Source of the DNA: Rhodosorus marinus CCMP1338
Lineage: Eukaryota > Plantae > Rhodophyta
DNA: 64,000 nt
NCBI GenBank assembly: GCA_029953675.1
Contig: JAMWBK010000011.1
Span: 310,001-374,000, forward strand
Direction: 5' to 3'
Part shown: piece after piece, positions 20,742 to 64,000 of the stretch
How positions within the stretch are numbered: position 1 is the first letter of the stretch
Layout of the letters: each line of letters starts with the position of its first letter
Translations under genes and position numbers: made by a program
Notes under the pieces: model-generated
Databases searched by the model: none
Seen by the model: the letters and a program-made list of their open reading frames with translations, nothing else
Told to the model about the DNA's origin: nothing

Positions 20742-22448
20742 TCAAACAGGACACCACAACTTTCGAGTTCCTTTCTTAACTATTTCACAACTCCGACCTT
20801 TCGGGCATCCCGTGCTTCTGCAGGGGTCGACTTTCCTGCTGCAGTTCATTCCGGTGAAGCCCGTCTCGCACTTGTCGTAGAACAGCCCAGTCACGACCTT
20901 CTTGTTGCGTCCTTTTAGCATCCTAAACGACTGAACCCCACCCGGGTAGTCTACTGAAACAGAGTACGATGCTGCACCACACTTGCCAATTCCAAAGTGC
21001 ATACGGGTACCCGCACTAACACTGTGGGACTGACCATTGGAGCCCACGCGCTGCGCAGTCCTCCGGTCTCCGCACCTAACTGTCACCACAGCACCCATGG
21101 GATGTCTGTCCCAATTCGCAAACGCCTGTTGTGCTCCCGCCCGCGGTCGGCCTACGAGCACAGTTACATAATCATTGTCAAAGTACGGCGTCTGGTTCTC
21201 GTACAACCTCCACGTCGCGTTCCTCGGTCCGACGAGCATGTCCATTCTGCCATCCTCGTTGTAGTCCAAGGCGATTGCTGTGTTCCCGTCCTCGAAATTG
21301 AAGGGTGATTCAGTCCCATGTTTCCCGGCAACCTTAAACTTGCCGTTCTTCTGGTTCAGAAGTAGGAGATCGTTTTTCCTCGGCTCGTTGAACGCCGTTT
21401 GCACCACCACGTACAGGTCCATGTATCCGTCAAGGTTGAAGTCGCCCGCCGTAACGTGATAGTGACGTCCCTCCAGTCTTATCCCTGCTCGCTGACTAAT
21501 GTCCTTGTACTTGCCGTTCGTCTTCTTGAACAAGAGATCATTGGAGCCGACGGCTCCCCAGGCACGTCCTCGGGCAATGTACAGTTCGAGACGGCCGTCC
21601 CCGTCGATATCGACCTCACAAGCGCAGCGTGCATCCTTGTAACCTTCACGGGAGTTATTAGTTTCCCGAATTTCGGGCAGAATGCCGTCGGCAAGCCTGA
21701 ACTTAAAAGGCGCGGTCCTCACGTACAGCTTTACACCATTGAAACCCATGAACAGGACATCCATGTGCCCGTCATCATTGGCATCCAGCGGATATACCCA
21801 ATAGGGCTCCGCAGCCTCCAACCCAGTGTTCTCGCGGACACGGTACCTTCCTTTACCAAGATTCTCATATACAACATGTTTCTTGGCAGGTCCGTTCGGG
21901 ATCCGTTGATTGGCAAAAAGAACGTCCAGGTCTCCATCAAGATCCATGTCAATCATTGCCATAGATCGTGCCCTAAACGAGGCCTCATTAAACCCATAGT
22001 CACCGCGCTGTACCTTCCACTCCCTCCCCGGCTGCTGGGTGACGATCAACGGAATAGCTGGATTTTTACCATTACTGCCTCCCTGAGTCACTATAATGTC
22101 GAGCAGGCCATCGCCATTCAAATCATCCGCAGCAGTAGCGTGGTAGTCTCCTCTGACGAGGCTCCCAAGCCTTCCCTTTTCAAAGCCTTTCTTGCATCTT
22201 CCCCAGTAGAAATCGATGGGGCTCCCATGGTTCCCCAAAATGAGATCCACGCACCCGTCTCCATCCACATCATAAATCGAGCTGCCCCAGTACTTGTTCC
22301 CCTCCGGCCTCCACTCGTTCATCTCACTTCTCGGAATCAGCCCCTTCCGAACAGTCACGTCCTTGAACGTCGGCTTGCGGATCCCCTGACCAAGCGCAAA
22401 ATAGAAAAAGCTCACAAGGAGCACGATCCCAAGTCCCTTCATCATCAT
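20742..22448 (-). CDS. Secreted FG-GAP/VCBS repeat + ASPIC-UnbV (CRTAC1-like) protein with Cys-rich tail, paralog 1
   Basis: Signal peptide, NKYWG, repeated DxDxDGxxD loops, SNGQSHS...MHFGIG and the tail CETGFTGMNC...C..C..C..C. Single open frame of 568 aa. Confidence 0.9.
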   Translation of the reverse strand: MMMKGLGIVLLVSFFYFALGQGIRKPTFKDVTVRKGLIPRSEMNEWRPEGNKYWGSSIYDVDGDGCVDLILGNHGSPIDFYWGRCKKGFEKGRLGSLVRGDYHATAADDLNGDGLLDIIVTQGGSNGKNPAIPLIVTQQPGREWKVQRGDYGFNEASFRARSMAMIDMDLDGDLDVLFANQRIPNGPAKKHVVYENLGKGRYRVRENTGLEAAEPYWVYPLDANDDGHMDVLFMGFNGVKLYVRTAPFKFRLADGILPEIRETNNSREGYKDARCACEVDIDGDGRLELYIARGRAWGAVGSNDLLFKKTNGKYKDISQRAGIRLEGRHYHVTAGDFNLDGYMDLYVVVQTAFNEPRKNDLLLLNQKNGKFKVAGKHGTESPFNFEDGNTAIALDYNEDGRMDMLVGPRNATWRLYENQTPYFDNDYVTVLVGRPRAGAQQAFANWDRHPMGAVVTVRCGDRRTAQRVGSNGQSHSVSAGTRMHFGIGKCGAASYSVSVDYPGGVQSFRMLKGRNKKVVTGLFYDKCETGFTGMNCSRKVDPCRSTGCPKGRSCEIVKKGTRKLWCPV

Positions 22449-23119
22449 AGCTTCCTACAGAGAGACCTCACCTCCCAACAAACAAGATCACTACCTCCCC
22501 AACACCCCCTGCAGACCAAGAGCTTTCACAGTCTTCCGTTCATATAGTCAAAAACCTACCGCGTCCTACCTCAAGACAACCTTGACGTAAAACGCACAAT
22601 CAGATATCGTCACAAAACAATGAGGAAAACAGAAACAGTCGCCTCCGGACGACGTTTCCTTGTCACTCCAACCCGACCATCCAGGTCGCTGTAACATTGG
22701 CCTTTATCGTTTGGCCCGAGTGAGTCATGGGCAAAAAACTCCAACGTCACACATCATCGGTAGACGGAAGACCATGCTCACGTATAGGAGAGCTCCAAGA
22801 AAACACGATATTTTTAATGTTGGAAGAAATCTGCCAGGCCACACTTCAATCCTAACTGTGGTGTGGCCTTACAAATCCTTGCCATCAATCCCCTCCCCCT
22901 CCCCTTATCTCCAGGCTAAGCTGGCGACTGGCTCAGGATATAAGTTTTGTTGATAAAATTATGAGGTGGATATGAAAATTTGGTTGTGTTTTATAAGCCC
23001 GTTAAGGTATTGGAATGTTTTCTTGTTTGTTTCTGATAGTTTCGACTGCATAATGGAGGAGCTTGATTGGCTTTCGCCTCGCGTGGCGAAAATGCGACCG
23101 TTTGTAAGGAAAAATTGAA

Positions 23120-27945: not shown

Positions 27946-28753
27946 ATGAAGGCTGGTGCGTTTGGTGTATTTTTTCTGCTTGCGGGATGCCTTTATATGG
28001 TATCTGCCATGGAGGGAGAGACTACTCTGGCTGAGCGCAACAGACGTTTCGGGAGTGCAAGTGACTTCGTATTCAACTTGAAAGGAGTTTCAGCAGATTT
28101 TACTCGCGCGGGAGCCAGGATCCAGGGTGGAGATGTCTCCAAGTTTCCTGCGTTGGATAATCTTGGAGTATCCAATACGCTCTTCACTATTAAGCCTTGC
28201 GGAAGTAAGATTGTAGACGTTCATTTTCATTCTTTCTTCCTTGAGTTCCGAGCTGAACTGTTAGTGAAAATCTTCCTTACCGTAGTGAATCTTCCACATT
28301 ACCACCCGCGAGCAACTGAGTTGATATACGTTATCAAAGGGCAGGATCTCACCGTAGCATTCGCGGAAGGTAAGTTTTCCTGGACATGCATGTTTGCTGG
28401 CACGGAACTGACCACGCTTATTTTCGCAAACTATAGAGAACTCTGGACGGAGTGCGGTTGTCAACGTAGTGGGTGAGGGAGACAATGCCGTATTCCCTCA
28501 GGGACTTCTACACTACCAAATCAACCTCAACTGCGAGCACGAGGTGCAGTTCCTCTCATCCCTGAGCAGCCATGACCCTGGCGTTGTGACAGTTCCAGAC
28601 CGCATGTTCGGTTTCGACGACACGGCCCTGGCTGTCGTCTTCAACAACCCGAGAATGAAAAGGTTTAGGAGACAGCGCTTGACCAATCTTAGATCTCTAT
28701 CACATCAGTGCATCGCGGATTGTAGGCGAAAGGGATATTCCATCGCTGCTTAA
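27946..28753 (+). CDS. Secreted spherulin-1/germin-like cupin A, 3 exons (introns 28205-28285, 28370-28436)
   Basis: Signal peptide; spliced germin box 1 PCGMNLPHYHPRATE; box 2 VFPQGLLHYQIN; SHDPG. Confidence 0.92.
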
Positions 28754-30850: not shown

Positions 30851-32192
30851 TGGTTTGTTAGTATGTCAACCTAACCCCTACTTTTTACGACTAACTTGCA
30901 CGTAAATATTTCTATTATGTAATATAGAACACTAATTTTCCGTTTCAATACCCCCCTAATTTCAAACCATAAATCATGTTATCCTTTTCGTTAATAAAAA
31001 CCGCCACATCGCCATCTCTCAACAGAAAAAATAAATATATATATAAATAATTCCCAACACTTTCAGAACTGACTCTACTAAGAGAATGCTCTTACCCCTA
31101 TTTTAAATATCTACATCCTTCTGAATATTTCTTGTTTTCATTATTCAACACTATTTTTGCAAGGTAACGCATCCCCCTATAGATTACAATCGAAAATAAT
31201 ATAGTTTTCTATATAAAATATCAATGAAGGAATCTGAGTAAACGCAGCTTCATTCATTTTTTAATGCTAAATTGGATTTTGATTTAGTTGGAAACCAGAA
31301 AACGAAGAAGGGATCATAATTTATTTTCGTCGTACAATATTTAACGATACAACTGTCGATCGCAGCTGTTTTGAAAGCTTTTGGAACCCAGACCAAAAAA
31401 AAGATTAAGATTATTTTCGTTATACAATATATAGACTAGGCAAAGTCTAGGAATGGAGGCAACTCTGAAAGTAGCTCCCTCAGCAGCATCTAAGGTTTGG
31501 TTGGGGAGTTCATTTCCCTACGCTCTGTCGAATATGAAAACTTCCCAGAACCGGAAGGTGGAATTCCCCGCCTACTCCCCAACCCCCCTCCACTCAAACC
31601 GAGTTCCCTACCCTGTGAATTGATTCCCAGGACCATCCAATGCGCTGCAAACATTTGGCCGGATGAGTTCTTGCGCAGAATCGATACTAGCACTGGAGGA
31701 TAATGCCAACTTCCACATGCTAGTCGAAGTCCACAAACGGGAACAGCTCCCAATGTAGCTCTCCTAGCCGTCATATCCACGAGGAGATCAAGAAACTTTT
31801 GGCTCGGGAGAAAACAAGAAGAATTCTCTTCAACTAGAATTAGTAAGCAAAAGAACCACATTGTTGGATTTTTTTGAAAGAGACACTGGGAGCGTCGCCT
31901 TGATTCGAACGTTGCTGCCTGGTCGCATGGCGGATTCGCCCTACATATTGGTTTCCAGGATTTTGGCTCCGTGGGCGAAACGTGTACGGCCACAATAGAG
32001 TAGCCATGTTATCAGAGGACGACCGTATCTCAAGAGCTTATATGGAAGCCCTAATCTCTCGGAAATCCTCTGGAGAGGGTTGGTGGGGCTGGATTTCTCC
32101 ACGGAGCTTCACCAGTCTCCTGGTTGAAGTTTCAGCAACCTCACTTTGTACCATTAACACTTGTTTCCTTTTTTACGCTATTTACACTTTTT

Positions 32193-36571: not shown

Positions 36572-37390
36572 ATGAAGACTGGAACGTTCTCGTTTTGTCT
36601 AGTTTTGGCAGTCTCTGCCTTGGCGGTCTCTGCAGGGTTTGACCCGTCCAAGGAAGTGAGGGACATACGCGCTGAACTTTTCCCACATGCGAAGGACTTC
36701 AAATTTAATCTGGCAGACGCTCCGGCGTCGAACAACGGAGTGGGAGCGAAGATTCAGGGCGGTTCGCAAGGCAGGTTTCCCGCTTTGAACGGGCTTGGGG
36801 TGTCCTACACACTCTTCACAATTGACCCCTGTGGAAGTACGTAGCATATCCCGATCAGAGATATATGGGTCAAGACCACTTGCTGACGTATCTGACATTT
36901 GAAACTCTCTTAACGTGTATAGTGAACCTGCCTCACGTTCATCCGAGGGCGACGGAGCTCATCTATATAATCAAGGGATATGGTCTGACCGTTGGATTCA
37001 GCGAAGGTACGTTATCACGGAACCCATTCTTTGCCTTCACGAGTACACCTCTAACCATGGAACACATGAACTTTGCTCCTCTCAATAGAAAACGGCGGCC
37101 GTGTGCTCGTGAACCGCAAGCTGAAGAAGGGCTGGACTACGGTCTTCCCGGAGGGACTGCCTCACTGGCAGATCAACACCAGCTGCTACCCGGTCCAGTT
37201 TATCTCTGCGCTGAGCCATGCGAGTCCCGGAGTTGTCACTGTGCCAGACAGGTTTTTGGGCACCAGCATCCCGGACTACGTCCTGTCGGTCGTTTTCAAC
37301 GTACCCAAAGAAGATGTTCAGGATATCCGGGACAGGTTGTCATCTAGAGATCTCGAGGCCGAGTGCAAGAGGAGGTGTGGAATCCAGTGA
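36572..37390 (+). CDS. Secreted spherulin-1/germin-like cupin C, 3 exons (introns 36837-36922, 37007-37088)
   Basis: Signal peptide; spliced PCGMNLPHVHPRATE; VFPEGLPHWQIN. Intron positions match cupin A. Confidence 0.92.
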
Positions 37391-38885: not shown

Positions 38886-39730
38886 ATGAAGACGGGTTTT
38901 GGTGGTGCGATTTTCACGATCATTGGGAGTCTTTTTCTGCAATCTGTGTGCGCGCACCCGTTGACTGCGCTCGAGAAACGAATTGATGACAACCCGTACG
39001 ACAGCGATTTTGTCCTCAACCTGGCAAATGTTTCTGCCACGGACAACGGCTTGGGAGCGAAGATCCAAGGGGGAGCAGTGGACCAATTCCATGCCTTGGA
39101 TGGTCTCAGAATATCAAACAGTATGTTCACGCTAGATGCATGTGGAAGTAAGTAGTGCAACAGGCTCAAGCTGTGTTTGCCAGTCTCGATTTACCACTGA
39201 TCCACCCGGGCCCCTCCCACCTCCGCAGTGAATCTCCCGCACATCCATCCACGAGCTACCGAAGAAATCTACGTTATGGCTGGTACCAACCTCACCTGCG
39301 GATTTTCTGAAGGTATTTTTAACGATCTGCTTATCTCCTTCCACTGCCGCCGTGGACTGATCTGCCCTTCTTCTCATCTCCAGAAAACGGTGGAAGAACT
39401 ATTATGAACACAATTAGCCAGGGTTGGAACGCCGTTTTTCCGATGGGTTTGCCACACTTCCAGATTAATAACAGCTGTGAGGAGGTCCGGTTCCTCTCAT
39501 CCTTGAGCCACGAAGATCCTGGTGTAATCACGTTGCCGGACCGTATCCTGGGATTCCCGGACAACGTCTTGCAGACAGCTTTCAACATCGGACACTATGG
39601 TAACGGTACCGATCAGTTCAAGGCTAAAATCGACATGCGAGAGATTCAGAAGAAATGTCTGCAGACTTGTAAGCACTCCACACCACCACATAATAGTACT
39701 GCATATAATACGACGACGACTTGGCACTAG
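38886..39730 (+). CDS. Secreted spherulin-1/germin-like cupin D with Thr/His-rich tail, 3 exons (introns 39148-39228, 39313-39383)
   Basis: Signal peptide; spliced ACGMNLPHIHPRATE; VFPMGLPHFQIN; HEDPG. Intron positions match cupins A and C. Confidence 0.92.
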
Positions 39731-43992: not shown

Positions 43993-44006
43993 TTTGTCGT
44001 CGTTCC

Positions 44007-47900: not shown

Positions 47901-49619
47901 TCAAAACTGTGGACCGGTCATTGGGCAGTAGATCGGATCCATGTCTGGACTGGTTGTCTCCTCGTACTCAATATTTGAGTATCCTAGCCATTTTTTGGTG
48001 AGACAGGGCAGGATGGTTTCTTTGCAGCCTTTTCCCGCCTTATTCGGGAGACAGGGAAAGTAGAGCCCTGACTCAAAAATCCTGTTGGCCCCCAAGTTCC
48101 CCGTCCGTTGAACGGTGACTCCACGCGCATACTTTACCTCGACTTTCTGCACGTTTCGACAGGATCCCAGTCCAAAGTGCAGTGTGTCAAAGTAGCTCTG
48201 AGAATGGGACTGCCCTGAGGCAGCTACTCGACGCAAGTGTACCACGCCATCGCATGTCACCTTCACCATCGCGTTCAATGGGTTCCTCTTTACCACCGGG
48301 TAGAATACGCTGGCGCGCGGGGCGCCCACTCTTACCAAGATGTAGTTGAAGTTCCTTGCTCTCGTGGAGGTGTTCTCGTAGAAGCTCCACGAAGCGTTCT
48401 TTCGACCTACCAGCAGGTCTAGCCTGCCGTCCAAGTTGTGGTCGTACGCCATGGCGTTGTTGCCGTCGCTGTTCGGAGGTAGATTTCGATCGAGCGCGGT
48501 CCCGGGAACGCTCCTAAAGGATCCATCTCCAAGGTTCATGAGCAGCAGGTCTGGAATCTGAGGAGGTTTGAACAGCGTTGCTCGACTGACGAAGATATCG
48601 ACGTGTCCATCGTTGTTGAAATCGCCGCAAGTAGCGTGGTAGTGCCTGCCGCCTACGGGCAGACCTCTCTCTTCGGAGATTGGATAGTAAATGTTATCCC
48701 TCTTCTCCCAGAGGATGTCGCTGACTACCTTATTTTCTTGTCTCCGTCCTCTAGCCATGTAAAGGTCCATGTCCCCATCCCCGTCGAAGTCGATCTCACA
48801 GTTGCAGTGAGCCCCCGTGACGTCAGCGCCACCATTTGGGAACGCGTTTTCTACCTTAACGAAAGTGAACCTACCAGTTCCTCTCCACAACTCGATTGAC
48901 GTCCATAACATTAGGATAATGTCCATGTATCCGTCTTCGTTGTAGTCGACCAGTGAGAACCAGGCCGCGTTGGTGAGCTCGAACCCGACTTTTCGCCCCA
49001 CAAACTGTCCATTGCCCATATTCTCGTAGAAGAGATGAATGCCATCGGTGGCTCTCGGAATCCTCCTGTTCACGTACAGGAGATCCAGATGCCCGTTCCC
49101 CTTGGCGTCGAAAAATGCTGTAGATCTTCCCCGGATGAACTGCTCGCCGAGGCCGAACTTCTCACCTCCCCCTTCGTCAAGCTTCTGAAAGTCTCTGGGA
49201 GGGAGCGCTTCAAGTATCAGGCCGGTTCCTGGAGCACTTCCATTTCTACCTCCACGGGTAACGATGACGTCGAGGTCCCCGTCGTTATCAAGGTCCGCAC
49301 ATGCCGTTCCATGGATATCTCTGCGGTACAGCCCCGGACTCTGAAACTCGTAGCTATCGTTGTCATCCGCCCACCAGAACTCAAGTCCATCCCCATGGTT
49401 GCCCAGAATCATCTCATATCTCCCATCGCGATTCACATCACACAATGTCATTCCCCAGTACTTGTTCTCCAGTTTGAACTCCGTCTTCTTCGGCGACTGG
49501 GTGTAGTTTCGAAGCCCAAACCTGTCACCGACCTCTTCAAACACCGGAATCCTCAATGATCTCGACGCTGATGCGACACAGATCAGTCCAAGAACCAGTA
49601 GCAGACTCCAGGCGTCCAT
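47901..49619 (-). CDS. Secreted FG-GAP + ASPIC-UnbV protein, paralog 4 (closest to paralog 3)
   Basis: MDAWSLLLVLGLICVASA signal peptide, ENKYWG, SGQSHSQSYFDTLHFGLG and a 4-Cys tail. Intronless. Confidence 0.9.
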   Translation of the reverse strand: MDAWSLLLVLGLICVASASRSLRIPVFEEVGDRFGLRNYTQSPKKTEFKLENKYWGMTLCDVNRDGRYEMILGNHGDGLEFWWADDNDSYEFQSPGLYRRDIHGTACADLDNDGDLDVIVTRGGRNGSAPGTGLILEALPPRDFQKLDEGGGEKFGLGEQFIRGRSTAFFDAKGNGHLDLLYVNRRIPRATDGIHLFYENMGNGQFVGRKVGFELTNAAWFSLVDYNEDGYMDIILMLWTSIELWRGTGRFTFVKVENAFPNGGADVTGAHCNCEIDFDGDGDMDLYMARGRRQENKVVSDILWEKRDNIYYPISEERGLPVGGRHYHATCGDFNNDGHVDIFVSRATLFKPPQIPDLLLMNLGDGSFRSVPGTALDRNLPPNSDGNNAMAYDHNLDGRLDLLVGRKNASWSFYENTSTRARNFNYILVRVGAPRASVFYPVVKRNPLNAMVKVTCDGVVHLRRVAASGQSHSQSYFDTLHFGLGSCRNVQKVEVKYARGVTVQRTGNLGANRIFESGLYFPCLPNKAGKGCKETILPCLTKKWLGYSNIEYEETTSPDMDPIYCPMTGPQF

Positions 49620-51021: not shown

Positions 51022-52356
51022 TCAACGGTCAAGTCCTTGTTCCTTTCTGTAGGTTTCCCAAGTTTCTTTGGACTCTGGTATCCAAGGCCACCGCCTGCCT
51101 GCCCTTTCACGCAAGCTTAGAGTCTCCGGGCACGCCTCGCAGATACCGAAACACCACTTCTCGTATCCCTCTGGCGGCCAGGTTTCACATATTGGGTTCA
51201 CCCCTGGACCTCCCTTGGGCGTGTACTTGTAGTCATCACAGGAACAGCCGTCCTCGCGGTTGAGGAGGCTCTCGTTCCAAGCCGGACACTCGGCAAAAGC
51301 GGCGCACAGCTCGGCAAAGTTCTCCACCACCTCGCAGATCTTATCGCTGGTACCCTTTTCACGAGCTGCGCTTGTATCAACGCGTTCCAGCCCAAGGAAA
51401 TCCAGAGACTGGTGATAGACATCGGTGGGATACGTGAGGTAGTCCTCATAGGGCTCCTCCAGAACGCAGCCGTCGGAGATCTTCTTGATCCCGTCGACCT
51501 TGTATTGGTGCGCCTTCCAGCTTCGGGTCATGATACAGTGGAGGTTGGCCATGTTGGTGATCTCGTAGGAGCATCCTACGCCAGTACTGCACCGATCTTC
51601 AAGAGCTTGCAGACCCTCTTCGCTGTTCGTGTTGATCCCGCCGATGGAAGTCTTGTCTCCGAGGTAGTGGTAAGCGTAGCGACCGATTGCCCTCTTCAGG
51701 TGATCCCTTCGGTAGTTGAAGATGATTTTGGTATCGAATTCATCGATGATCTTCTTGAACTCCTCTGGATACTTCAGAACCGGGAGGATGCCCAGCTTGA
51801 AGCCCGGCATTTTGCCCTTTTCCAAAACCATGGTGAAATATTCCCTGATCCACTCTATCCCTGCCGTGACGTTTCCAGACTTTGCCCTGAACTTGGGTTG
51901 GTTCATGGGTTCGAAAGTTCCGACCGCATCCGGGCCTCGGTCCCAGTATACTTGCGGGTGCTCAACAAGCTGACTGATCAGCGCTGTGCTTCCCGCGTGA
52001 GACGTCATGATGATGAAAAAGCTCCTCGCAGGTTTCTTATTCTCGTTGCATGCAGGAATTCTCCTGGAAAGGTGGTCGAACTCGTTCTTCGAACCCTTCC
52101 TGTTCAGCTGCTCATTCACTTGCTCAACTGCCTTCCGGTCTTCTTCAACATTTCCATAGTCCTCATAGATGTCCGACAATACTTCCTCACCCCTCGTCGG
52201 CTTCTTATGCTCGTCAACTCGCGTCGAACCCGGTATCCCAGGAAGCTGCCCCTGAATCACAAACAGAGCAACCATAAATACCCCAATCACAGCAAACGGC
52301 TTCCAGTTCAACGAACTCGAACCCCTCCTCGACGGCTTCCCACGTGCCACCGCCAT
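51022..52356 (-). CDS. Type II membrane (Golgi-like) PAPS-dependent sulfotransferase, Stf0/NodH-like, with Cys-rich C-terminus
   Basis: Short basic N-terminus, TM segment FAVIGVFMVALFVI and a stem region. FFIIMTSHAGSTAL is 5'-PSB-like; FEP and GFK follow; IFNYRRDHLKRAIG is 3'-PB-like. Intronless. Confidence 0.78.
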   Translation of the reverse strand: MAVARGKPSRRGSSSLNWKPFAVIGVFMVALFVIQGQLPGIPGSTRVDEHKKPTRGEEVLSDIYEDYGNVEEDRKAVEQVNEQLNRKGSKNEFDHLSRRIPACNENKKPARSFFIIMTSHAGSTALISQLVEHPQVYWDRGPDAVGTFEPMNQPKFRAKSGNVTAGIEWIREYFTMVLEKGKMPGFKLGILPVLKYPEEFKKIIDEFDTKIIFNYRRDHLKRAIGRYAYHYLGDKTSIGGINTNSEEGLQALEDRCSTGVGCSYEITNMANLHCIMTRSWKAHQYKVDGIKKISDGCVLEEPYEDYLTYPTDVYHQSLDFLGLERVDTSAAREKGTSDKICEVVENFAELCAAFAECPAWNESLLNREDGCSCDDYKYTPKGGPGVNPICETWPPEGYEKWCFGICEACPETLSLRERAGRRWPWIPESKETWETYRKEQGLDR

Positions 52357-53654: not shown

Positions 53655-55331
53655 TTAGATCGGGCAGTAGTAGTTTCTGTTCAATAGAGTCTCGCATCTC
53701 ATCCCCTGTGGACATTTTCCGTCTCTGCACTGTGGGATTCTCCTTGTACATTGCTTGCCGATGAATCCCCTCGGGCAGGGCCAGTACTGACCCACCTCGA
53801 TCACGCGGTCAACGCCGAAGAAGTTGCCCTTGGATACGGTGACTCCACCGACGTATTTGACGGAGATTCGAAGGATCCGATTGCACGTGCCGAGGCCAAA
53901 GTGGAGGGTATCCATGTAGCTCTGTGAGTGGGAAGATCCATGTCCGTCAACACGCTTAACGAAGACGCGATCCTTGCAGAAAACCTTGACCAGTGCTCCG
54001 AGGGGTGTCTTCTTTAGCCACGGTCGGAAGTGACCAGCCAGCGGCGTTCCGACCCTGATAATGACCCAATGGTTCCCGTTCTGCGGGGTTTGATTCTTGT
54101 ACAGACGCCATGTAGCGTTGAGATTACCCGTGAGGATGTCCAGACGGCCGTCCATGTCGTAGTCAAACACACCAGAGCTGTCGCCGTCCTCTCTCCTGCT
54201 CGGTGGCTCTGTCCCATGCCTGGGAGCGACTTTGAACGTGCCGTCGCCTCTGTTGAGCAGCATCAGATCGCGAAGACGAGGCGCGTTGAAGAACGTCACT
54301 CGCGTGATGTACAGATCTTCGTAGCCGTCGTTGTTGAAATCCCCGTGTGAAACGTGAAAGTGTCGGCCGGAAAGCTTGGCTATGCCGGCCTTCTCCGCGA
54401 TGTTCACAAACACACCCTTGCGCCTCTCTAGCAGGACGTCGGGGAAGGGCTTATGCCTGGCGCCTCGAGCAAAGTACAGGTCCATGTCACCGTCGCCGTC
54501 CATGTCGAACTCGGCAATACACCGAACGTTGCTCATCGTTTTCCAGCCGGGGATCATGCCCACGTTCCTCCGAAACTTGAACGCCCCGGTTCCGAGCCAC
54601 AGTTCAACTCTATCAAAGGCCATCAGTATAATATCCATCCATCCATCGCCATTGACGTCTAGAAGCTTAAACCAGAGCGCATTGACGCGCTCAATACCAA
54701 CATTGGGTGTGAAGGCGAACTTTCCGTTCCTGAGGTTTCTGTACATCAGGTGTGCGGAAGTTGCGGAGATGTTCCGCTGGTTTACGTAGAGCAGATCCAG
54801 GTAACCATCCCCGTTCATATCCAGAGCAGATATGGAACGCCCTCGCATCCCTTTCGTAGCTATACGAAACTTTTGCCCCTCGTCCCGGGTCCATGTTCTG
54901 TCCTTGCTGACATCGAAAACCACGGGCTTGGCGGGCTCCTTGCCGGACTTGCCCCCTCTCGTGAAAATCACGTCCATAACATTGTCATTGTCCATATCCA
55001 GCGCACAAGTGCTGTGAATATCTCTCAAAGCCAGCCTCGGATTCATGTACTGAAACCGCGCCTGCCCTTGCGACCAGTACCACTCCGCATTGTTCCCGTG
55101 ATTCGAAAGCAGAAGATCATACCTCCCATCTCGATCCACATCCACAATCGAACTTCCCCAGTACTTGTTCAGGGTTGGACGCCGCCTATCCGTCTGTCCC
55201 AGCCTCAACAGCCCAACCGGCCCGGACACGTCGCGATACGTTGGCACTACAACCGGCTGACCCAACCCCAGACCCACAACAAAAACAGCCACAAAAATAC
55301 ATCCAAGTCCAAGAGACCTCATCCTGTTCAT
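53655..55331 (-). CDS. Secreted FG-GAP + ASPIC-UnbV protein, paralog 5
   Basis: Signal peptide, LNKYWG, DxDxDG loops, GHGSSHSQSYMDTLHFGLG and the 6-Cys tail CPRGFIGKQC...; intronless. Confidence 0.9.
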   Translation of the reverse strand: MNRMRSLGLGCIFVAVFVVGLGLGQPVVVPTYRDVSGPVGLLRLGQTDRRRPTLNKYWGSSIVDVDRDGRYDLLLSNHGNNAEWYWSQGQARFQYMNPRLALRDIHSTCALDMDNDNVMDVIFTRGGKSGKEPAKPVVFDVSKDRTWTRDEGQKFRIATKGMRGRSISALDMNGDGYLDLLYVNQRNISATSAHLMYRNLRNGKFAFTPNVGIERVNALWFKLLDVNGDGWMDIILMAFDRVELWLGTGAFKFRRNVGMIPGWKTMSNVRCIAEFDMDGDGDMDLYFARGARHKPFPDVLLERRKGVFVNIAEKAGIAKLSGRHFHVSHGDFNNDGYEDLYITRVTFFNAPRLRDLMLLNRGDGTFKVAPRHGTEPPSRREDGDSSGVFDYDMDGRLDILTGNLNATWRLYKNQTPQNGNHWVIIRVGTPLAGHFRPWLKKTPLGALVKVFCKDRVFVKRVDGHGSSHSQSYMDTLHFGLGTCNRILRISVKYVGGVTVSKGNFFGVDRVIEVGQYWPCPRGFIGKQCTRRIPQCRDGKCPQGMRCETLLNRNYYCPI

Positions 55332-56342: not shown

Positions 56343-58016
56343 TCATCTTCCTACGATACAATAGTAAATCGTGTTCTTGTTGTTCTTAAAGAACATACGT
56401 TCGCAGCGCTGCCCTCCGCATCTCTTGAGGCTGCATTTGGGGTGCGTCAGTTTGCATTTGGGTCCGTTGGTGCCCTTGGGGCATTTACAAACTTTTCCAA
56501 TCGTGATAATCTTGTCCACGGACAGGCCGATTTCCCTTACGAGCCTGACGCCTCCCATGTAGTCCACGATGATCGATTTGATCTGCTTCTCCTGCCCGAG
56601 ACCAAAGTGCAGGGTATCCATGAACGCCTGTGAATGGGAACGACCCGGCGTGGTCACTCTCCGCATGAACTTCTTGTTCTTAGTGACAACCGTAACGACA
56701 GCACCCATTGGGCTTCTCTTCAGTTTCGGGTTGAGGTTGATAGCCGTTGGACGTCCCACTCGGACGATGACGTAGTGGCGATTACCCGGAGGAGTCTGAT
56801 TTCGGTATAGATTCCAGGTCGAGTTTCTCATTCCGCTGAGAATATCAACCTTTCCATCTAGGTCAAAGTCGAACGCGATCGAGTTGTTTCCATCCTCGTA
56901 CTGATTCTGCGATTCGGTTCCAGTGTTCTTCACCTGGACAAAGTCCATTCCCTTTCGGCTTAGGAGCATGATATCATTCTGGCGGCGTGTGTTGTAGTCC
57001 GTGTTCACGGTCAAGTAGAGGTCGATGTAGCCGTCATTGTTGAAGTCGCCATAGGTCACGTGCCCGTTATGGCCGAGCAAGCCCAGGTTTGTCTTCGAAG
57101 TGACGTCTACGTACTTGCCTCCGCGGTTCTCCAACAACGTGTTAGGGATATTGTACCTTCCGGGGAATCCTCGAGCGAGGAACAGATCGAAATCACCGTC
57201 GTTGTCGTAGTCAATCTCCGCAACGGAGGTCGTGCGCCAGACCCTGTTTGCCGGGAAGACGTTCTCCTGCCGGACAAACTTGAAGCTCCCCGTTCCGGCG
57301 TAGACTTCGAGCGTTCTCAGGTGGAAAACAAGGAAGTCGAGATTTCCATCGTTGTTGTAGTCGATCAGCGTGTGGGTCCATCCCCCAATAAACTCAAGTC
57401 CGGTGTTCTCACGAAGTCTGAACTTGCCGCGGCCCATGTTTTCATATACATAGTTGCCCCGCGGGTCATCCAACTTATCCTGGTTGAGGAACACGAGGTC
57501 CAGGTCGCCGTCGTGGTCGATATCCAAAAAGGTCGGACACCTGCCCCTCATGGTCTCCTTTCCAAACCCAAAGCTCGTGCCAGCGTCCTTCCTGAAGGTC
57601 TTATCCTCGTTCACCTTGAAGTAAATCGGCAACCCAGGCTTCCGCCCCCCACTTCCGCCAATCGCCACTACTACGTCCATCATGCCGTCGTTGTCCATGT
57701 CCGCTGCCGCCGTCCCATGTACATCATGAAGATACAACCTCGGATCCTTCGACTTAAACATATTATGCCCCTCCGAGTAGTACCACTCCACGTTGTTCCC
57801 GTGGTTGCTCAGGAACAAATCGTACCTCCCATCACAGTCGATATCCGCGATCGTCGCACCGTAATACTTCGACATCTCAGGACGCCTTCTATGATTCTGC
57901 GCAAGCGTCTGGATCCCACGAGCTGCGGATACATCGTTGAACGCCGGCTTCACTGCAGCCTCACACCCAACCCAAACCAATGAAAAAAAAATTATCAAAT
58001 CCCTAAAAACCCCCAT
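56343..58016 (-). CDS. Secreted FG-GAP + ASPIC-UnbV protein, paralog 6
   Basis: Signal peptide, SKYYG, ADIDCDGRYD, PGRSHSQAFMDTLHFGLG and a 7-Cys tail; intronless. Confidence 0.9.
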   Translation of the reverse strand: MGVFRDLIIFFSLVWVGCEAAVKPAFNDVSAARGIQTLAQNHRRRPEMSKYYGATIADIDCDGRYDLFLSNHGNNVEWYYSEGHNMFKSKDPRLYLHDVHGTAAADMDNDGMMDVVVAIGGSGGRKPGLPIYFKVNEDKTFRKDAGTSFGFGKETMRGRCPTFLDIDHDGDLDLVFLNQDKLDDPRGNYVYENMGRGKFRLRENTGLEFIGGWTHTLIDYNNDGNLDFLVFHLRTLEVYAGTGSFKFVRQENVFPANRVWRTTSVAEIDYDNDGDFDLFLARGFPGRYNIPNTLLENRGGKYVDVTSKTNLGLLGHNGHVTYGDFNNDGYIDLYLTVNTDYNTRRQNDIMLLSRKGMDFVQVKNTGTESQNQYEDGNNSIAFDFDLDGKVDILSGMRNSTWNLYRNQTPPGNRHYVIVRVGRPTAINLNPKLKRSPMGAVVTVVTKNKKFMRRVTTPGRSHSQAFMDTLHFGLGQEKQIKSIIVDYMGGVRLVREIGLSVDKIITIGKVCKCPKGTNGPKCKLTHPKCSLKRCGGQRCERMFFKNNKNTIYYCIVGR

Positions 58017-58086
58017 TTTTCCCCCTCCAACCCCCCAAAAACCAAAGATTCCAAATAATTTGCCTCACAGCTCACCTGCCCACCCC

Positions 58087-59858: not shown

Positions 59859-61538
59859 TTACTGTCCAGGTGGTACTTTGCAGTAGTATTTTTTGCCGGG
59901 GTTGTCTGTGAAGAATGCGGTCTCGCAGCGTGTGCCGGCGCAGCTCTTCATGCTGCACTCTGGTTTCTTTAGGGCGCAGTTGGGCCCGGTTTTGTTACCT
60001 GAGCATTTACACTGTCTTCCGATGAGGATCGTGGAGTCTACTGTTATCCCCCCTTCTCGGATAACCCTGACTCCGCCGTTATAGTCGATGGTGATCTTCT
60101 CTATCTTGTCCCTCTTGCCCAAGCCGAAGTGCAGCGTGTCCATAAAGGCCTGTGCGTGGGAACGTCCAGGGGTGGACACCCGCCTTATGAAGACTCTGGT
60201 GGACGTTAAAACTCGAACTACAGCATGCATTGGACTCCTCTTCAGGTTCTTGTTCAGCACCCGTGCGGACGGCCTTCCAACCTGGACGAGGAGATAGTGG
60301 CGCCCTCCGTATGGCGTCCTATTCTCGTACAAATTCCAAGTTCCATTCCTGGCGCCTGAGAGGATATCCACCCTCCCGTCATTATCATAGTCAAACGCGA
60401 TTGAATTGTTTCCGTCCTCGTACGGATTTTTGGACTCCGTTCCGGTCCTCTTTTCCTTGACAAACCGCTTCCCAGCCTGGTTGACCAGCATGATATCATT
60501 TTTTCGAGGTCTCTTCTTATCAACAGTTTCAGTTATGTACAGATCAATGAAACCGTCGTTGTTGAAATCGCCGTAAGTGACGTGCCGGCTGTGGCCAACG
60601 ATGTCAGAATTCGTCTTCTTCTCCACGGCCACGTACCTTCCACCGCGATTTTCCAAGAGGATGTTCGGAGCCTCGTACTTGCCGGGGAATCCCCTTGAGA
60701 GGTAGAGATCGAAATCACCATCGCCGTCGTAATCGAATTCGGCCATCGATGCTACTAGCCTCAGGTTAATGTCCGGCAGGATGTTCTTCTTCAGATTGAA
60801 CTTGAAGCGACCAGTTCCAAGGTAGACATCCGGGCCTGGAACGTCGAAGACAATCAGATCCAAGTTTCCGTCGTTATCTATGTCCAGCACGAGGTGCTTA
60901 AACCCAAAGATCTTCTCTAAACCAGTCTTGTTGCGCAGCCGAAATTGACCGTTCCCGAGGTTTTCGTAGACGTAATGGCTCCTGTTGCTGTCCAGCTTGG
61001 GAGCGCTAAGAAAGATCAGATCCAGATCACCATCATTGTCGATATCAATGTAAGTCGCGGTTCTGCCACGTGTCTTTCCCTGGTCAAGTCCCCACTTCTC
61101 ACCGCGGTCTGTCTTGTACGTCTGGTCCTTGCCAACGTGGAAGAATATGGGAAGCCCTGGTTTGGTCCCTCCACTGCCCCCAAGCGTGAAGATCACGTCC
61201 TTGACCCCATCGTTATCCAAATCCCCAGCAGCAGTCCCGTGGACATCATGATTTTTCAGCTTCGGATCCATAGACGTGAACTTCTTCGTCCCCTTGGACC
61301 AGTACCACTCGGCATTGTTCCCATGGTTGCTCAACACCAAATCGTACCTCCCATCACAATCCAAATCCGCTATAGTCGCTCCAAAATACTTGCTGTCCTC
61401 CGGACGCCGCCTGTGGTTCTCCTCAAGCGTCTGAATTCCCCTCAACTTGGACACATCCTTGAACACAGGCTTCACCGCCCCTTCACATCCAACCCACACC
61501 AATAGATAAATTAAAACAAACACAGAAACCCTCCCCAT
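59859..61538 (-). CDS. Secreted FG-GAP + ASPIC-UnbV protein, paralog 7
   Basis: MGRVSVFVLIYLLVWVGCEGA signal peptide, SKYFG, ADLDCDGRYD, PGRSHAQAFMDTLHFGLG and a 7-Cys tail; intronless. Confidence 0.9.
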   Translation of the reverse strand: MGRVSVFVLIYLLVWVGCEGAVKPVFKDVSKLRGIQTLEENHRRRPEDSKYFGATIADLDCDGRYDLVLSNHGNNAEWYWSKGTKKFTSMDPKLKNHDVHGTAAGDLDNDGVKDVIFTLGGSGGTKPGLPIFFHVGKDQTYKTDRGEKWGLDQGKTRGRTATYIDIDNDGDLDLIFLSAPKLDSNRSHYVYENLGNGQFRLRNKTGLEKIFGFKHLVLDIDNDGNLDLIVFDVPGPDVYLGTGRFKFNLKKNILPDINLRLVASMAEFDYDGDGDFDLYLSRGFPGKYEAPNILLENRGGRYVAVEKKTNSDIVGHSRHVTYGDFNNDGFIDLYITETVDKKRPRKNDIMLVNQAGKRFVKEKRTGTESKNPYEDGNNSIAFDYDNDGRVDILSGARNGTWNLYENRTPYGGRHYLLVQVGRPSARVLNKNLKRSPMHAVVRVLTSTRVFIRRVSTPGRSHAQAFMDTLHFGLGKRDKIEKITIDYNGGVRVIREGGITVDSTILIGRQCKCSGNKTGPNCALKKPECSMKSCAGTRCETAFFTDNPGKKYYCKVPPGQ

Positions 61539-61680: not shown

Positions 61681-62443
61681 CGAACGTCCCGGCTCGCTAT
61701 TTGTCTCTCAGAGTCCGCTAGTAACTATGATGGCTATATTTGTTTGGAAAACAAAATCGGAAACGTAACATTTGTCTTTTGTAAGGATGAATTGGCCGGA
61801 TGAAATGATGAGAACATGATTATTAAATTATTTTCATCGATTGGAAAATCCCAATCAAATGGTTGGTTGAAAGGTTGGACAGGCTGTAATAGACAGCCTG
61901 TCCGATGTTGAGAATTCTGTTCTTGGGTATGGTTTTCCTTTACGGGATTTGGTATGGTGCTTTACTTTACTATGGGATGGAGTTGGATTGGGTTTGCCTT
62001 TTCTGTTGAGCAAGGTTTGACCTTGTTGGTTTCTGTGTAGTAGATGGGAGGTCTTGTGGTGGTTTCCGTTTTTGAACATTGTCTAGGCCTTTGGCGGGTG
62101 TTGTGGCGGGGAGGAGATTATGACTTGGTTGGCGGGTTGGAACTTTTTCCTTGCTCGGGCGTGTTTTGGAATGGGATCAGTGCTTAAAGGTGGTCGCTGC
62201 GATCTCGGTTTGCCGCCGTAGTTTGCAGAGAATCATATTGTTTTTACTAGATTCAAGTACTCAAAGTTAGCTGCTTGAGTGCACAATTTTGCTGGACAAA
62301 GGTTGGGTTGCCTCCCGGCTCTTGAAAAGCCCAATATTTTCTGCTTCAAGCGTATCTTTCGTGCTCCTGGTTTCTTAAATACTGGTCCTACCCCTGTTAA
62401 AGCCGGACTAAAGCTCCCAATCATCCTGGCACCAAGCTCGCGG

Positions 62444-64000
62444 TCATGGCACCTTCCTCCCCACGACGCAGTAGTAGATTAATCGTCTGTTACCGTTTAA
62501 GAACCCTCGTTCACATCGCCTTCCGGCACATCTCTTCCAGCCGCAAACTGGTGCTGGTAGTTTGCAATTTGGGCCGTTCGTTCCTTTGGGACATTTGCAA
62601 ACCTTTCCAATCGTGATAATTTTGTCAACCTGTATGCCGATTTCTCTGATCACAGTGACGCCTCCCATGTACTCCACTATGATTCTCAAAACCTTAGTCT
62701 GAGTCCCGAGCCCAAAGTGGAGCGTCTCCATGCATGCCTGAGAGTGTGACCGTCCGGGGGTTGAAACTCGCTTCATAAAGATTCCCCCGGGAGTCACCAC
62801 TTTAACAACTGCGTACATGGGGCTCCTGTCCATTTTTGGGTTCATTGACGCGCAGGCAGGTCTGCCTACTCGGACGATGATGTAGTGCCGGTTACCCTTC
62901 GGAGTCGTATTTCTGTACAAGTTCCAGGTCGAGTTTCGATTGCCGGACAAAATATCCGGCTTTCCGTCGTTGTCAAAGTCGAACGCAATCGAATTGTTGC
63001 CATCCTCCCACGGATTCTTGGATTGTGTCCCCACATTCCTCGTCTTCGTAAAGAACTTACCGCCGTTGTTGAGCAGCATCAGATCCTGCATACGCCGTTT
63101 CTTGTAGTCGGTGGTAAAAGTCACGTACAGATCGTCCCATCCATCGTTGTTGAAATCAGCAAACGTCGCGTGTCGATTGTGCCCGAGTATGTTGACACCC
63201 GTAGAATTGCTGACGTCAACAAAGATTCCGTTGCGATTTTCCAGCAGGATGTTCGGCATGTTATACACCCCGGGGTAGCCCCTCGTCATGTACAGATCAA
63301 AATCTCCGTCGCGGTCGTAGTCAAACTCCACGATGGACGTCACCAGCCTCATGTTAATGTTCGGCAATATCTTGTTGTTTTTGATGAACTTGAAACCCCC
63401 AGTACCCAAGTAGACGTCGACTCGTTCGATCATGAAAACCAGGATATCGATGTTCCCGTCGTTGTTAATGTCAACAATAGTGTTCGTGAATCCTGGTCGC
63501 ATTTCTAGTCCTGTGTTTTCTCGCAGACGAAATTTTCCATTCCCAAGGTTCTGGTAGACGTAATTTTTCCTTCCGCCGTCCAGCTTCTGCTGGTTGATGA
63601 ACATTAAATCAAGCTTGCCATCGTGGTTCAAGTCCACAAAGGCAGCCGTTCTCCCGCGCATCAGCTCGTTGCCGAATCCGTACTTGAACCCAGCGTCCCT
63701 CTTCCACGTGTGATTCTTCTTGACACTGTAGTAGATTGGAACTCCAGGTTTTTGCCCCCCACTTCCGCCAATCGTGAATACCACGTCCATGATTCCGTCG
63801 TCGTCCAAATCCCCAGCAGCGGTCCCGTGCACGTCGTGCATATAAAGGCGAGGATCCATGCTCTCAAACATGTTGTGCCCTTTCGACCAGTACCACTCCG
63901 CATTGTTCCCATGGTTGCTCAGGATCAAATCGTACCTGCCATCACAGTCCAGGTCAGCAATCGTCGCCCCATCGTACTTGCTCCCCTCTGGCCTTCGCCT
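62444..64000 (-). CDS. Secreted FG-GAP + ASPIC-UnbV protein, paralog 8 (5' end lies beyond the window)
   Basis: The frame is open to the window edge (RRRPEGSKYDGATIADLDCDGRYDLILSNHG...). PGRSHSQACMETLHFGLG and a 7-Cys tail are present. Confidence 0.9.
   Translation of the reverse strand, partial: RRRPEGSKYDGATIADLDCDGRYDLILSNHGNNAEWYWSKGHNMFESMDPRLYMHDVHGTAAGDLDDDGIMDVVFTIGGSGGQKPGVPIYYSVKKNHTWKRDAGFKYGFGNELMRGRTAAFVDLNHDGKLDLMFINQQKLDGGRKNYVYQNLGNGKFRLRENTGLEMRPGFTNTIVDINNDGNIDILVFMIERVDVYLGTGGFKFIKNNKILPNINMRLVTSIVEFDYDRDGDFDLYMTRGYPGVYNMPNILLENRNGIFVDVSNSTGVNILGHNRHATFADFNNDGWDDLYVTFTTDYKKRRMQDLMLLNNGGKFFTKTRNVGTQSKNPWEDGNNSIAFDFDNDGKPDILSGNRNSTWNLYRNTTPKGNRHYIIVRVGRPACASMNPKMDRSPMYAVVKVVTPGGIFMKRVSTPGRSHSQACMETLHFGLGTQTKVLRIIVEYMGGVTVIREIGIQVDKIITIGKVCKCPKGTNGPNCKLPAPVCGWKRCAGRRCERGFLNGNRRLIYYCVVGRKVP

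What the first reader, a model, noticed from the sequence alone, without database searches (positions are those of the whole stretch)
20742..64000. Expanded array of at least eight secreted FG-GAP/ASPIC-UnbV (CRTAC1-like) proteins
Seen: eight co-oriented minus-strand paralogs of about 550-580 aa. All share DxDxDGxxD loops, a C-terminal SHS...HFG(L/I)G domain and a Cys-rich tail. The seven whose 5' end is in the window have a signal peptide, and KY(W/Q/Y/F/D)G follows near the N-terminus in all eight. They fall into three sequence subgroups (1/2/5, 3/4, 6/7/8), and the array runs off the window. Established: FG-GAP/VCBS repeats form Ca2+-binding beta-propellers as in integrin alpha, and the ASPIC-UnbV combination defines vertebrate CRTAC1 and many bacterial proteins. 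Inference: this is a lineage-specific, diversifying family of extracellular adhesion or matrix proteins. I know of no described function for such an array in algae.
Basis: partly seen in the sequence, partly recalled or inferred. Interest (0 to 1): 0.85.

Follow-up and report, generated by a model that had tools for sequence, protein, structure and literature searches.

The report
Red-alga array of secreted calcium-propeller proteins
A unicellular red alga carries an old tandem array of at least 13 genes for secreted calcium-binding propeller proteins of the CRTAC1 family. Their nearest bacterial relatives sit inside gene clusters for digesting red-seaweed wall sugars, which suggests the proteins bind or modify the alga's own sulfated sugar coat.

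Summary
The window is Rhodosorus marinus contig JAMWBK010000011.1 (window = record minus 310,000). It carries eight minus-strand paralogs with a signal peptide, seven Dx[DN]x[DN]GxxD loops, an UnbV_ASPIC domain and a Cys-rich tail. All pass Pfam thresholds.

An AlphaFold model of g5 (pLDDT 91.7) matches the murine CRTAC1 crystal structure 9ETN best (TM 0.71).

Corrections:
- g2 carries a frameshift.
- The proposed subgroup 1/2/5 is not a clade.
- The array continues outside the window to at least 13 copies in about 80 kb.
- The duplicates are old (synonymous sites saturated) and under purifying selection (dN/dS about 0.2), not measurably diversifying.

New lead: the red-algal proteins group with bacterial lipoproteins from marine agar and carrageenan degraders (100% NJ bootstrap against 70 generic homologs). 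In 6 of 8 such bacterial loci the gene lies beside agarase/porphyranase, sulfatase or 3,6-anhydrogalactose catabolic genes, against 0 of 78 control loci. The group shares an invariant Lys/His/His/Arg/Arg/Arg signature that generic relatives lack.

A sulfotransferase gene sits inside the algal array.

Most likely these are secreted proteins that bind or remodel sulfated matrix glycans. This is inferred, not shown.

The parts
20742..22448 (-). g1, CRTAC1-like paralog, 568 aa, intact
   Evidence: ORF. Pfam FG-GAP_3 2e-32 and UnbV_ASPIC 26.5 bits. Seven Ca loops. No transcript at 90% identity or above was found.
40110..41767 (-). g2, CRTAC1-like paralog interrupted by a frameshift near 41,250-41,264. 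It is either a pseudogene or an assembly error.
   Evidence: Two overlapping ORFs in different frames with continuous homology. GenBank-aa and 348-aa genes. No cluster mates or transcripts.
44007..45752 (-). g3, paralog, 581 aa (P0005). Its tail has only 4 Cys.
   Evidence: A JGI transcript-like contig is at least 90% identical.
47901..49619 (-). g4, paralog, 572 aa, sister of g3 (68% identity)
   Evidence: MMETSP transcript P0136.
51022..52356 (-). Sulfotransferase-like gene, 444 aa, with an N-terminal membrane anchor, lying between g4 and g5 (context)
   Evidence: No Pfam or PDB hit here. UniProt names its 90%-identity cluster mates 'Sulfotransferase domain-containing protein', and they are transcribed.
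53655..55331 (-). g5, paralog, 558 aa. This is the copy that was modelled.
   Evidence: Pfam. AlphaFold pLDDT 91.7 and pTM 0.92. Foldseek top hit 9ETN.
56343..58016 (-). g6, paralog, 557 aa. The GenBank model of 510 aa omits the signal peptide.
   Evidence: The complete 557-aa MMETSP transcript P0140 supports the longer ORF.
59859..61538 (-). g7, paralog, 559 aa
   Evidence: The MMETSP transcript P0003 is in the same 90% cluster.
62444..64000 (-). g8, paralog cut by the window end. The full protein P0002 is 557 aa and has a signal peptide.
   Evidence: MMETSP member P0131.
27946..28753 (+). Germin-like cupin gene 1, with a signal peptide (context; interleaved second tandem family)
   Evidence: Cupin_1.
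36572..37390 (+). Germin-like cupin gene 2 (context)
   Evidence: Cupin_1.
38886..39730 (+). Germin-like cupin gene 3 (context)
   Evidence: Cupin_1.

Best explanation
Architecture. These are genes for soluble secreted proteins. Each has a signal peptide, then a seven-bladed FG-GAP beta-propeller with a calcium loop in every blade, then an UnbV_ASPIC beta-sandwich. In Rhodosorus only, a short disulfide-rich tail with EGF-like sequence follows.

Origin of the array. The copies are ancient tandem duplicates, at least 13 in about 80 kb, each kept under purifying selection.

Subfamily. They belong to a distinct branch of the CRTAC1/ASPIC-UnbV family that red algae share with marine bacteria that degrade red-algal galactans.

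Inferred mechanism. Calcium rigidifies the propeller from one face. The opposite face carries a subfamily-invariant ring of basic residues: K56, H78, H106, R163, R165 and R289 in g5 numbering, contributed by blades 1, 2, 3 and 5. That ring engages an anionic sulfated glycan of the cell coat. The protein therefore binds, cross-links or enzymatically remodels the sulfated polysaccharide matrix, and the paralogs differ in specificity.

Shown: domains, fold, secretion-type features, array structure, age, transcription of five copies, the bacterial neighbourhoods, and the residue signature.

Inferred: the ligand, the face on which the signature sits, and whether the proteins bind or catalyse.
For: Domains and fold.
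- Pfam domains in all eight copies.
- AlphaFold model with pLDDT 91.7. Its best PDB match is murine CRTAC1 9ETN (E = 1.7e-25, TM 0.71). Next come the fungal GlcNAc-binding propeller lectins PVL and AAL-2, and integrin alpha.
- Seven Ca motifs per protein. These are the 'calcium blades' described in PMC3123361.

Secretion. Signal-like N-termini with no other TM segment. NxS/T sequons are present in every copy.

Array and age. Saturated dS and dN/dS of 0.18-0.20 come. DNA similarity is confined to coding sequence at 65-69%.

Transcription. Transcripts at 90% identity or above exist for g3, g4, g6, g7 and g8.

Subfamily. Red-algal proteins plus marine-bacterial proteins form a group with 100% NJ bootstrap against 70 generic homologs.

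Bacterial neighbourhoods.
- Reichenbachiella: GH86-type porphyranase, sulfatase, GH117-like gene, and anhydrogalactose dehydrogenase and cycloisomerase.
- Saccharophagus degradans: GH86, GH50-type agarase, the same catabolic genes, and a TonB receptor.
- Further loci L008, L009, L010 and L012.
- Of 78 generic-family control loci, none has a GH86 or GH117-like neighbour, and the few hits to the other query genes are weak (24-37% identity).

Residue signature. It is near-invariant in the subfamily, at most 11% in generic homologs, and invariant in 12 Rhodosorus paralogs.

Local context. A sulfotransferase gene lies inside the array. Red microalgal walls are sulfated galactose/xylose/glucose/glucuronate polymers, and sulfated heteropolysaccharides are reported for Rhodosorus.
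Against: - No binding or activity data exist for any member of the subfamily, and animal CRTAC1 itself has no settled biochemical function.
- Two of eight bacterial loci (Flammeovirga, Marinimicrobium) show no galactan-related neighbours. L005 and L009 are close relatives and so not independent.
- Rhodosorus is not known to make agar or 3,6-anhydrogalactose, so the bacterial substrate and the algal ligand may differ.
- The position of the signature residues on the face away from the calcium loops is deduced from their register in the FG-GAP repeat and from integrin topology, not from coordinates, which the tools do not expose.
- The trees are neighbour-joining on simple distances. Relationships inside the subfamily are unresolved, so gene transfer and its direction are open.
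- No Pfam carbohydrate-binding module was found in the bacterial N-terminal domain.
Confidence: 0.5

Rival explanations
1. Protein-protein adhesion or matrix scaffold proteins, as usually assumed for animal CRTAC1 and integrin-like propellers. The propeller would bind protein ligands, and the EGF-like tail would mediate matrix assembly.
For: Best structural match is CRTAC1, then integrin alpha. The proteins are secreted and have an EGF-like Cys-rich tail. One out-of-window copy, P0011, adds a Pro/Thr-rich mucin-like stalk. CRTAC1 is described as an ECM protein with an integrin-like domain and an EGF-Ca domain.
Against: Identity to CRTAC1 is only 17%, and the subfamily signature residues are absent from it. 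The tail is missing from all other red-algal and bacterial members, so it cannot define the core function. The bacterial sister proteins sit in polysaccharide-catabolic loci, not adhesion loci.
Confidence: 0.22
2. True enzymes rather than lectins. They would be a new propeller-based activity on sulfated galactans, for example desulfating ring closure (sulfurylase-like), a lyase or a hydrolase. Algae would use it to mature the wall and bacteria to degrade it.
For: Invariant His/His/Arg/Arg/Arg/Lys constellation at equivalent blade positions. Tight linkage to 3,6-anhydrogalactose catabolic genes and sulfatases in bacteria. Propeller enzymes appear among the fold matches (aldos-2-ulose dehydratase). 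Red-algal GH16 enzymes provide a precedent for enzymes shared with bacterial degraders (title and abstract of PMC9771727).
Against: No known catalytic motif. No polysaccharide lyase or hydrolase appears among the top 50 fold matches. The known carrageenan sulfurylase II is a different, about 32 kDa family (from memory; one search shows 263 aligned positions). The bacterial proteins are lipoproteins, which also fits surface glycan-binding proteins.
Confidence: 0.15
3. A recognition or defence repertoire: soluble receptors that diversify to recognise microbes or their glycans.
For: Large tandem family of secreted repeat proteins. The paralogs are highly divergent, 33-71% identity.
Against: The duplicates are old, with saturated dS and average dN/dS near 0.2. 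There are no recent copies and no DNA-level similarity outside coding sequence. The putative site residues are invariant across paralogs. Orthologs in other strains are at least 90% identical.
Confidence: 0.08

Closest known systems
Vertebrate CRTAC1 (cartilage acidic protein 1 / ASPIC / LOTUS); crystal structure 9ETN
   Same: Secreted. FG-GAP calcium propeller followed by an UnbV_ASPIC domain with the HFGLG motif, then a small Cys-rich module. It is the best fold match (TM 0.71) and the only PDB sequence hit.
   Different: Only 17% identity. CRTAC1 lacks H78, H106 and R163 of the algal/bacterial signature. The Rhodosorus tail gets no Pfam EGF hit and shows no Ca-binding EGF consensus. CRTAC1 is single-copy or has few copies, not an array.
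Bacterial 'CRTAC1 family' lipoproteins of agar/carrageenan degraders (Saccharophagus degradans P0022, Reichenbachiella carrageenanivorans P0144, Flammeovirga P0018, Alteromonadaceae M269 P0033)
   Same: Closest relatives outside red algae (over 200 bits). Same group at 100% bootstrap. Same K/H/H/RGR/R signature.
   Different: Bacterial lipoprotein signal, an extra N-terminal domain of about 130 aa, and an insertion of about 120 aa in the propeller. No Cys-rich tail. Single genes within catabolic loci rather than arrays.
Other red-algal ASPIC/UnbV proteins (Gracilariopsis, Agarophyton, Porphyra, Pyropia)
   Same: Same architecture up to the UnbV_ASPIC domain, with signal peptides, at 30-33% identity.
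   Different: About 500 aa and end right after UnbV_ASPIC with no Cys-rich tail. One to three copies were seen, on different contigs, so no array is evident.
Fungal seven-bladed calcium-propeller lectins (Psathyrella velutina lectin PVL, Agrocybe AAL-2)
   Same: Seven FG-GAP-like blades with Dx[DN]xDG calcium loops. They bind sugars. Second-best class of fold matches (TMt about 0.5; PMC3123361).
   Different: No UnbV_ASPIC domain and no tail. No detectable sequence membership. Their sugar-binding residues were not compared.
Integrin alpha head propeller
   Same: Seven-bladed FG-GAP propeller with calcium hairpins.
   Different: Integrins have calcium sites in only 3-4 blades, plus thigh and calf domains, a TM helix and a beta subunit. 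None of these is present here.

Membership tests
CRTAC1 / ASPIC-UnbV family (Pfam architecture FG-GAP repeats + PF07593) | FG-GAP / FG-GAP_3 repeats above Pfam gathering score | tested here: met
   All eight copies: FG-GAP_3 at 45.7-132 bits against a cut-off of 26.9.
CRTAC1 / ASPIC-UnbV family (Pfam architecture FG-GAP repeats + PF07593) | UnbV_ASPIC domain C-terminal to the propeller | tested here: met
   All eight copies: 24.4-38.0 bits against a cut-off of 23.4. Several are only just above threshold. The HFG[LI]G motif is conserved.
CRTAC1 / ASPIC-UnbV family (Pfam architecture FG-GAP repeats + PF07593) | Overall fold like the solved CRTAC1 structure | tested here: met
   Foldseek against 9ETN: E = 1.7e-25, TM 0.71 in both normalisations, rmsd 9.0 Å. 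The next hit is at E = 8.6e-10.
Vertebrate CRTAC1 proper (orthology) | Closest relatives are metazoan CRTAC1 | tested here: not met
   Nearest relatives are red-algal and marine bacterial proteins. CRTAC1 scores only 40 bits at 17% identity.
Vertebrate CRTAC1 proper (orthology) | C-terminal calcium-binding EGF domain | tested here: inconclusive
   No Pfam EGF hit on five tails. A tail profile does match Notch and Delta EGF repeats (best single-repeat E about 0.002), but the match spans the end of one EGF and the start of the next. No DxD/NEC-type Ca-EGF consensus is visible.
Red-algal / galactan-degrader subfamily (defined here) | Signature K56, H78, H106, GGxxGxxP(126-133), R163-G-R165, R289 (g5 numbering) | tested here: met
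   Conserved at 90-100% in 61 subfamily sequences and at 0-26% in 70 generic homologs. Invariant in 12 Rhodosorus paralogs.
Integrin alpha subunits | Propeller followed by thigh and calf domains and a transmembrane helix | tested here: not met
   The proteins end 45-90 aa after UnbV_ASPIC, and there is no TM-like segment beyond the signal peptide.
Red-algal galactose-sulfurylase II (Chondrus multigene family) | Homology to the about 32 kDa GS-II proteins | not testable with these tools
   No GS-II sequence was available. The literature gives a 263-position alignment for the family, which does not fit a propeller protein of about 530 aa. The candidate identity was dropped on size grounds only.
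Secreted eukaryotic glycoprotein | Cleavable signal peptide, no membrane anchor | tested here: met
   Hydropathy: the N-terminal 15-aa window scores 2.1-3.0, elsewhere at most 1.7, and no C-terminus is hydrophobic. This is a heuristic; SignalP was not available.

The most novel reading that the evidence does not exclude
The red-algal and bacterial subfamily is a previously unrecognised class of calcium-propeller proteins dedicated to red-algal sulfated galactans. Possibly it is a new enzyme family, for example acting on galactose-6-sulfate or 3,6-anhydrogalactose units. It would have been exchanged by horizontal transfer between red algae and the bacteria that eat them. The alga would use it to mature its wall and the bacteria would use it in agar and porphyran utilisation loci.
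Probability: 0.15. Interest if true: 0.8.

Novelty: new variant of a known kind. Interest (0 to 1): 0.45.

Why it matters
Red-algal wall biosynthesis and remodelling is poorly understood at the protein level. Reviews state that only the galactose-sulfurylases have been characterised biochemically.

An uncharacterised, conserved component of bacterial agar and porphyran loci that has a 13-copy secreted counterpart in a red alga gives a concrete and cheap hypothesis to test by expression, glycan binding and activity assays. It could reveal a new glycan-binding or glycan-modifying fold.

It also gives a functional handle on the CRTAC1/ASPIC-UnbV family, whose biochemical role is unsettled even in animals.

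If the glycan link fails, what remains is an ordinary lineage-specific expansion of an already annotated domain family.

Tried and rejected
- Extra or degenerate copies in the window: tblastn found none.
- Intron as the cause of the g2 split: rejected. The two frames overlap within a few bases and there is no room for an intron.
- Pfam EGF or any other domain on the tails: nothing significant.
- Genome-wide copy count by protein search: the word-indexed searches missed known window paralogs (g1, g4 and g6 were absent). A profile query did worse. So 13 is a lower bound, and no copy on another contig was seen.
- Identity with galactose-sulfurylase II: dropped on size. The primary paper was not held.
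- Carbohydrate-binding module in the bacterial N-terminal domain: no Pfam support.
- The genome-contig scan used generic calcium-loop patterns and returned mostly generic family members. These were reused as a control set.
- Shared upstream promoter motif among the eight genes: none. The upstream regions are merely G/T-rich.
- tRNAs: none.
- dN/dS for in-window pairs: synonymous sites are saturated, so only out-of-window pairs and g7/g8 gave numbers.
- Bacterial contamination as an explanation: rejected. The genes lie on a 1.44-Mb contig among intron-containing eukaryotic genes and match transcripts in R. marinus MMETSP transcriptomes.

Full report
**Source of the window.** Protein look-ups place the window on Rhodosorus marinus (a unicellular red alga, Stylonematophyceae), assembly GCA_029953675.1, contig JAMWBK010000011.1 of 1,442,050 bp. 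Window coordinate equals record coordinate minus 310,000. The assembly comes from the minicircle-mitogenome paper PMC10250338. That paper does not mention this gene family.

**The observation.**
- Six-frame ORF listing and tblastn show exactly eight family members, all on the minus strand, and no extra fragments.
- All eight pass Pfam gathering thresholds for FG-GAP_3, FG-GAP and UnbV_ASPIC. UnbV_ASPIC is often only just above threshold, at 24.4-38.0 bits against 23.4.
- Every copy has seven calcium-type loops at a spacing of about 50-58 aa, a KYxG motif before blade 1, SH[SA]...HFG[LI]G in the UnbV_ASPIC domain, and a Cys-rich tail.
- g8 runs off the window. Its full product, P0002 of 557 aa, has a signal peptide.
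- A hydropathy scan shows one N-terminal signal-like segment and nothing else membrane-like in all 13 known copies.

**Corrections to the observation.**
- g2 is frameshifted at about 41,250-41,264. Its reading frame changes inside the third calcium loop, and GenBank annotates two genes. It has no transcript or cluster mate. It is therefore either a pseudogene or an assembly error.
The groups 3/4 and 6/7/8 are real.

**Extent and age of the array.**
- Beyond the window the contig carries five more copies. They are P0012, P0007, P0011 and P0006 on the plus strand and NDN08_007108 on the minus strand. A flotillin-like gene lies among them.
- That makes at least 13 copies in about 80 kb.
- Pairwise protein identity is 33-71%.
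- DNA similarity is limited to coding sequence at 65-69%.
- Synonymous sites are saturated for all in-window pairs. The youngest pairs give dS of about 1.0-1.2 with dN/dS of 0.18-0.20.
- The array is therefore old and conserved, not recently or measurably diversifying.
- Rhodosorus copies are monophyletic relative to other red-algal homologs at 88% bootstrap, or 98% when two unidentified transcripts are included. In the larger 131-sequence tree Rhodosorus alone gets only 44%; the 98% figure with the two transcripts holds. The expansion is therefore specific to this lineage.
- R. marinus MMETSP or JGI transcripts at least 90% identical exist for g3, g4, g6, g7 and g8, but not for g1, g2 or g5.

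**Structure.**
- An AlphaFold2 model of g5 built on a 53-sequence alignment is confident, with pLDDT 91.7 and pTM 0.92.
- Foldseek against the PDB puts the murine CRTAC1 crystal structure 9ETN far ahead of everything else (E = 1.7e-25, TM 0.71). Fungal GlcNAc-binding propeller lectins (PVL, AAL-2) and integrin alpha heads follow at E of about 1e-9.
- 9ETN is also the only PDB sequence hit (E = 1.7e-9).
- The proteins are thus members of the CRTAC1/ASPIC-UnbV family by architecture and fold, but they are not orthologs of animal CRTAC1.

**The Cys-rich tail.** Other red-algal and bacterial members lack it. It has no Pfam hit. A profile of 13 tails matches Notch and Delta EGF repeats across an EGF-EGF boundary. 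It is EGF-like in sequence, restricted to this lineage, and cannot be shown to be homologous to the EGF-Ca domain of CRTAC1.

**The new lead: nearest relatives.**
- The nearest non-algal relatives are 'CRTAC1 family' lipoproteins of about 610-750 aa. They come from marine bacteria known for degrading red-algal polysaccharides: Saccharophagus degradans, Reichenbachiella carrageenanivorans, Flammeovirga, Gilvimarinus and an Alteromonadaceae bacterium.
- In a 131-sequence NJ tree, red-algal and these bacterial proteins form one group with 100% bootstrap against 70 generic bacterial homologs.
- Inside the group, red algae are not resolved as monophyletic. Horizontal transfer is therefore possible, but neither it nor its direction is shown.

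**The new lead: bacterial gene neighbourhoods.**
- Reichenbachiella: GH86-type porphyranase, sulfatase, a GH117-like gene, and the Aldedh plus MR_MLE pair typical of 3,6-anhydrogalactose catabolism.
- Saccharophagus: GH86, a GH50-type agarase, the same catabolic genes, and a TonB receptor.
- An Alteromonadaceae MAG: three sulfatases plus Aldedh and MR_MLE.
- Two metagenomic contigs: one repeats the Reichenbachiella gene order. The other has a GH117-like gene (78% identity), GH2 and galactokinase.
- A gammaproteobacterial MAG: cytochrome P450 plus ferredoxin reductase. From memory, this resembles the 6-O-methyl-galactose demethylase system of porphyran loci.
- Two loci show no link.
- Of 78 control loci that encode generic family members, none has a GH86 or GH117-like neighbour, and the few hits to the other query genes are weak, at 24-37% identity.

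**The new lead: residue signature.**
- The subfamily carries near-invariant residues that generic homologs lack: K56, H78, H106, G126/G130/P133, R163-G-R165 and R289.
- All are invariant in the 12 aligned Rhodosorus paralogs.
- H78, H106 and R163 are absent from mouse CRTAC1 in the HMMER alignment.
- They occupy equivalent registers relative to the calcium motif, at -8/-6 or +13/+14, in blades 1, 2, 3 and 5.
- In FG-GAP propellers the calcium hairpin lies on one face. This is established for integrin alpha and recalled from memory.
- That register places the signature residues on the opposite face near the axis, which is the usual ligand or active site of propellers.

**Local context in the alga.**
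- Between g4 and g5 lies a type-II-membrane-looking gene. UniProt names its 90%-identity cluster mates 'Sulfotransferase domain-containing protein'.
- Three secreted germin-like cupin genes and a cupin remnant lie between g1 and g2.
- Red microalgal walls are sulfated heteropolysaccharides rich in galactose, xylose, glucose and glucuronate. Sulfated polymers are reported for Rhodosorus.

**Interpretation.**
- Best explanation (confidence about 0.5 for the ligand part, above 0.9 for the structural part): these are secreted, calcium-stabilised propeller proteins that bind or remodel the sulfated glycan matrix. An ancient array has been retained for differing specificities.
- Whether they are lectins or enzymes is open. 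I give about 0.15 to a true enzymatic role.
- The generic protein-adhesion reading remains possible (about 0.22). A defence-repertoire reading is unlikely (about 0.08).
- I considered and dropped an identity with the Chondrus galactose-sulfurylase II family, on size grounds.

**Novelty and score.**
- The family and its domains are already annotated in public databases as ASPIC/UnbV or CRTAC1 family. The array as such is a new member of a known kind.
- Three things were not found in the searchable literature: the distinct red-alga/galactan-degrader subfamily, its signature, and its placement in agar and porphyran loci. Together they make it a new variant with a testable function.
- Interest is 0.45.

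Noticed in passing
window 51022-52356 (-): A 444-aa gene with an N-terminal membrane anchor lies inside the array. It has no Pfam or PDB hit here. UniProt names its 90%-identity cluster mates in R. marinus transcriptomes 'Sulfotransferase domain-containing protein'. It may be a Golgi carbohydrate sulfotransferase.
   Followed up: partly
window 27946-28753, 36572-37390, 38886-39730 (+); remnant at 32192-32276: Three intron-containing germin-like Cupin_1 genes, at least one with a signal peptide, plus a 28-codon cupin remnant. They form a second tandem family between g1 and g2. Segments 29422-30451 and 32519-33631 are 68% identical duplicates.
   Followed up: partly
window 56343-58016 (g6); L001 2081-3835 (out-of-window copy P0012): Two GenBank gene models look wrong. 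The g6 model (510 aa) starts at an internal Met and loses the signal peptide, whereas a complete 557-aa transcript exists. The P0012 model is spliced into a non-homologous C-terminus, although a single intact 585-codon frame is present.
   Followed up: yes
L002 10001-12055 (P0011, outside the window): One paralog (684 aa) carries a C-terminal Pro/Thr-rich extension with about seven TEGPTDTA repeats. It looks like a mucin-type stalk.
   Followed up: no
L005, L006, L008-L010, L012 (bacterial loci): An uncharacterised 'CRTAC1 family' lipoprotein is a recurrent component of agar, porphyran and anhydrogalactose utilisation loci in Bacteroidota and Gammaproteobacteria. I found no paper that discusses it.
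   Followed up: partly
window 8379-9254 (-) and 10246-11070 (+): Two divergently oriented MgtC-family genes. A DUF179/AlgH-like gene lies at 12228-13054 (-) and a small C2H2 zinc-finger gene at 19452-19937 (+), next to g1.
   Followed up: no
window 43391-43993 and 18147-18396: Short non-coding tandem or dispersed repeats. Units of about 85-260 bp at 77-85% identity lie just downstream of g3, and a 121-bp unit occurs twice at 18150-18396. Their meaning is unknown.
   Followed up: no
L002 14012-17755 (P0006 and NDN08_007108): Two convergent paralogs only about 320 bp apart were assembled into one MMETSP transcript contig (Transcript_23721). This suggests overlapping 3' ends.
   Followed up: no
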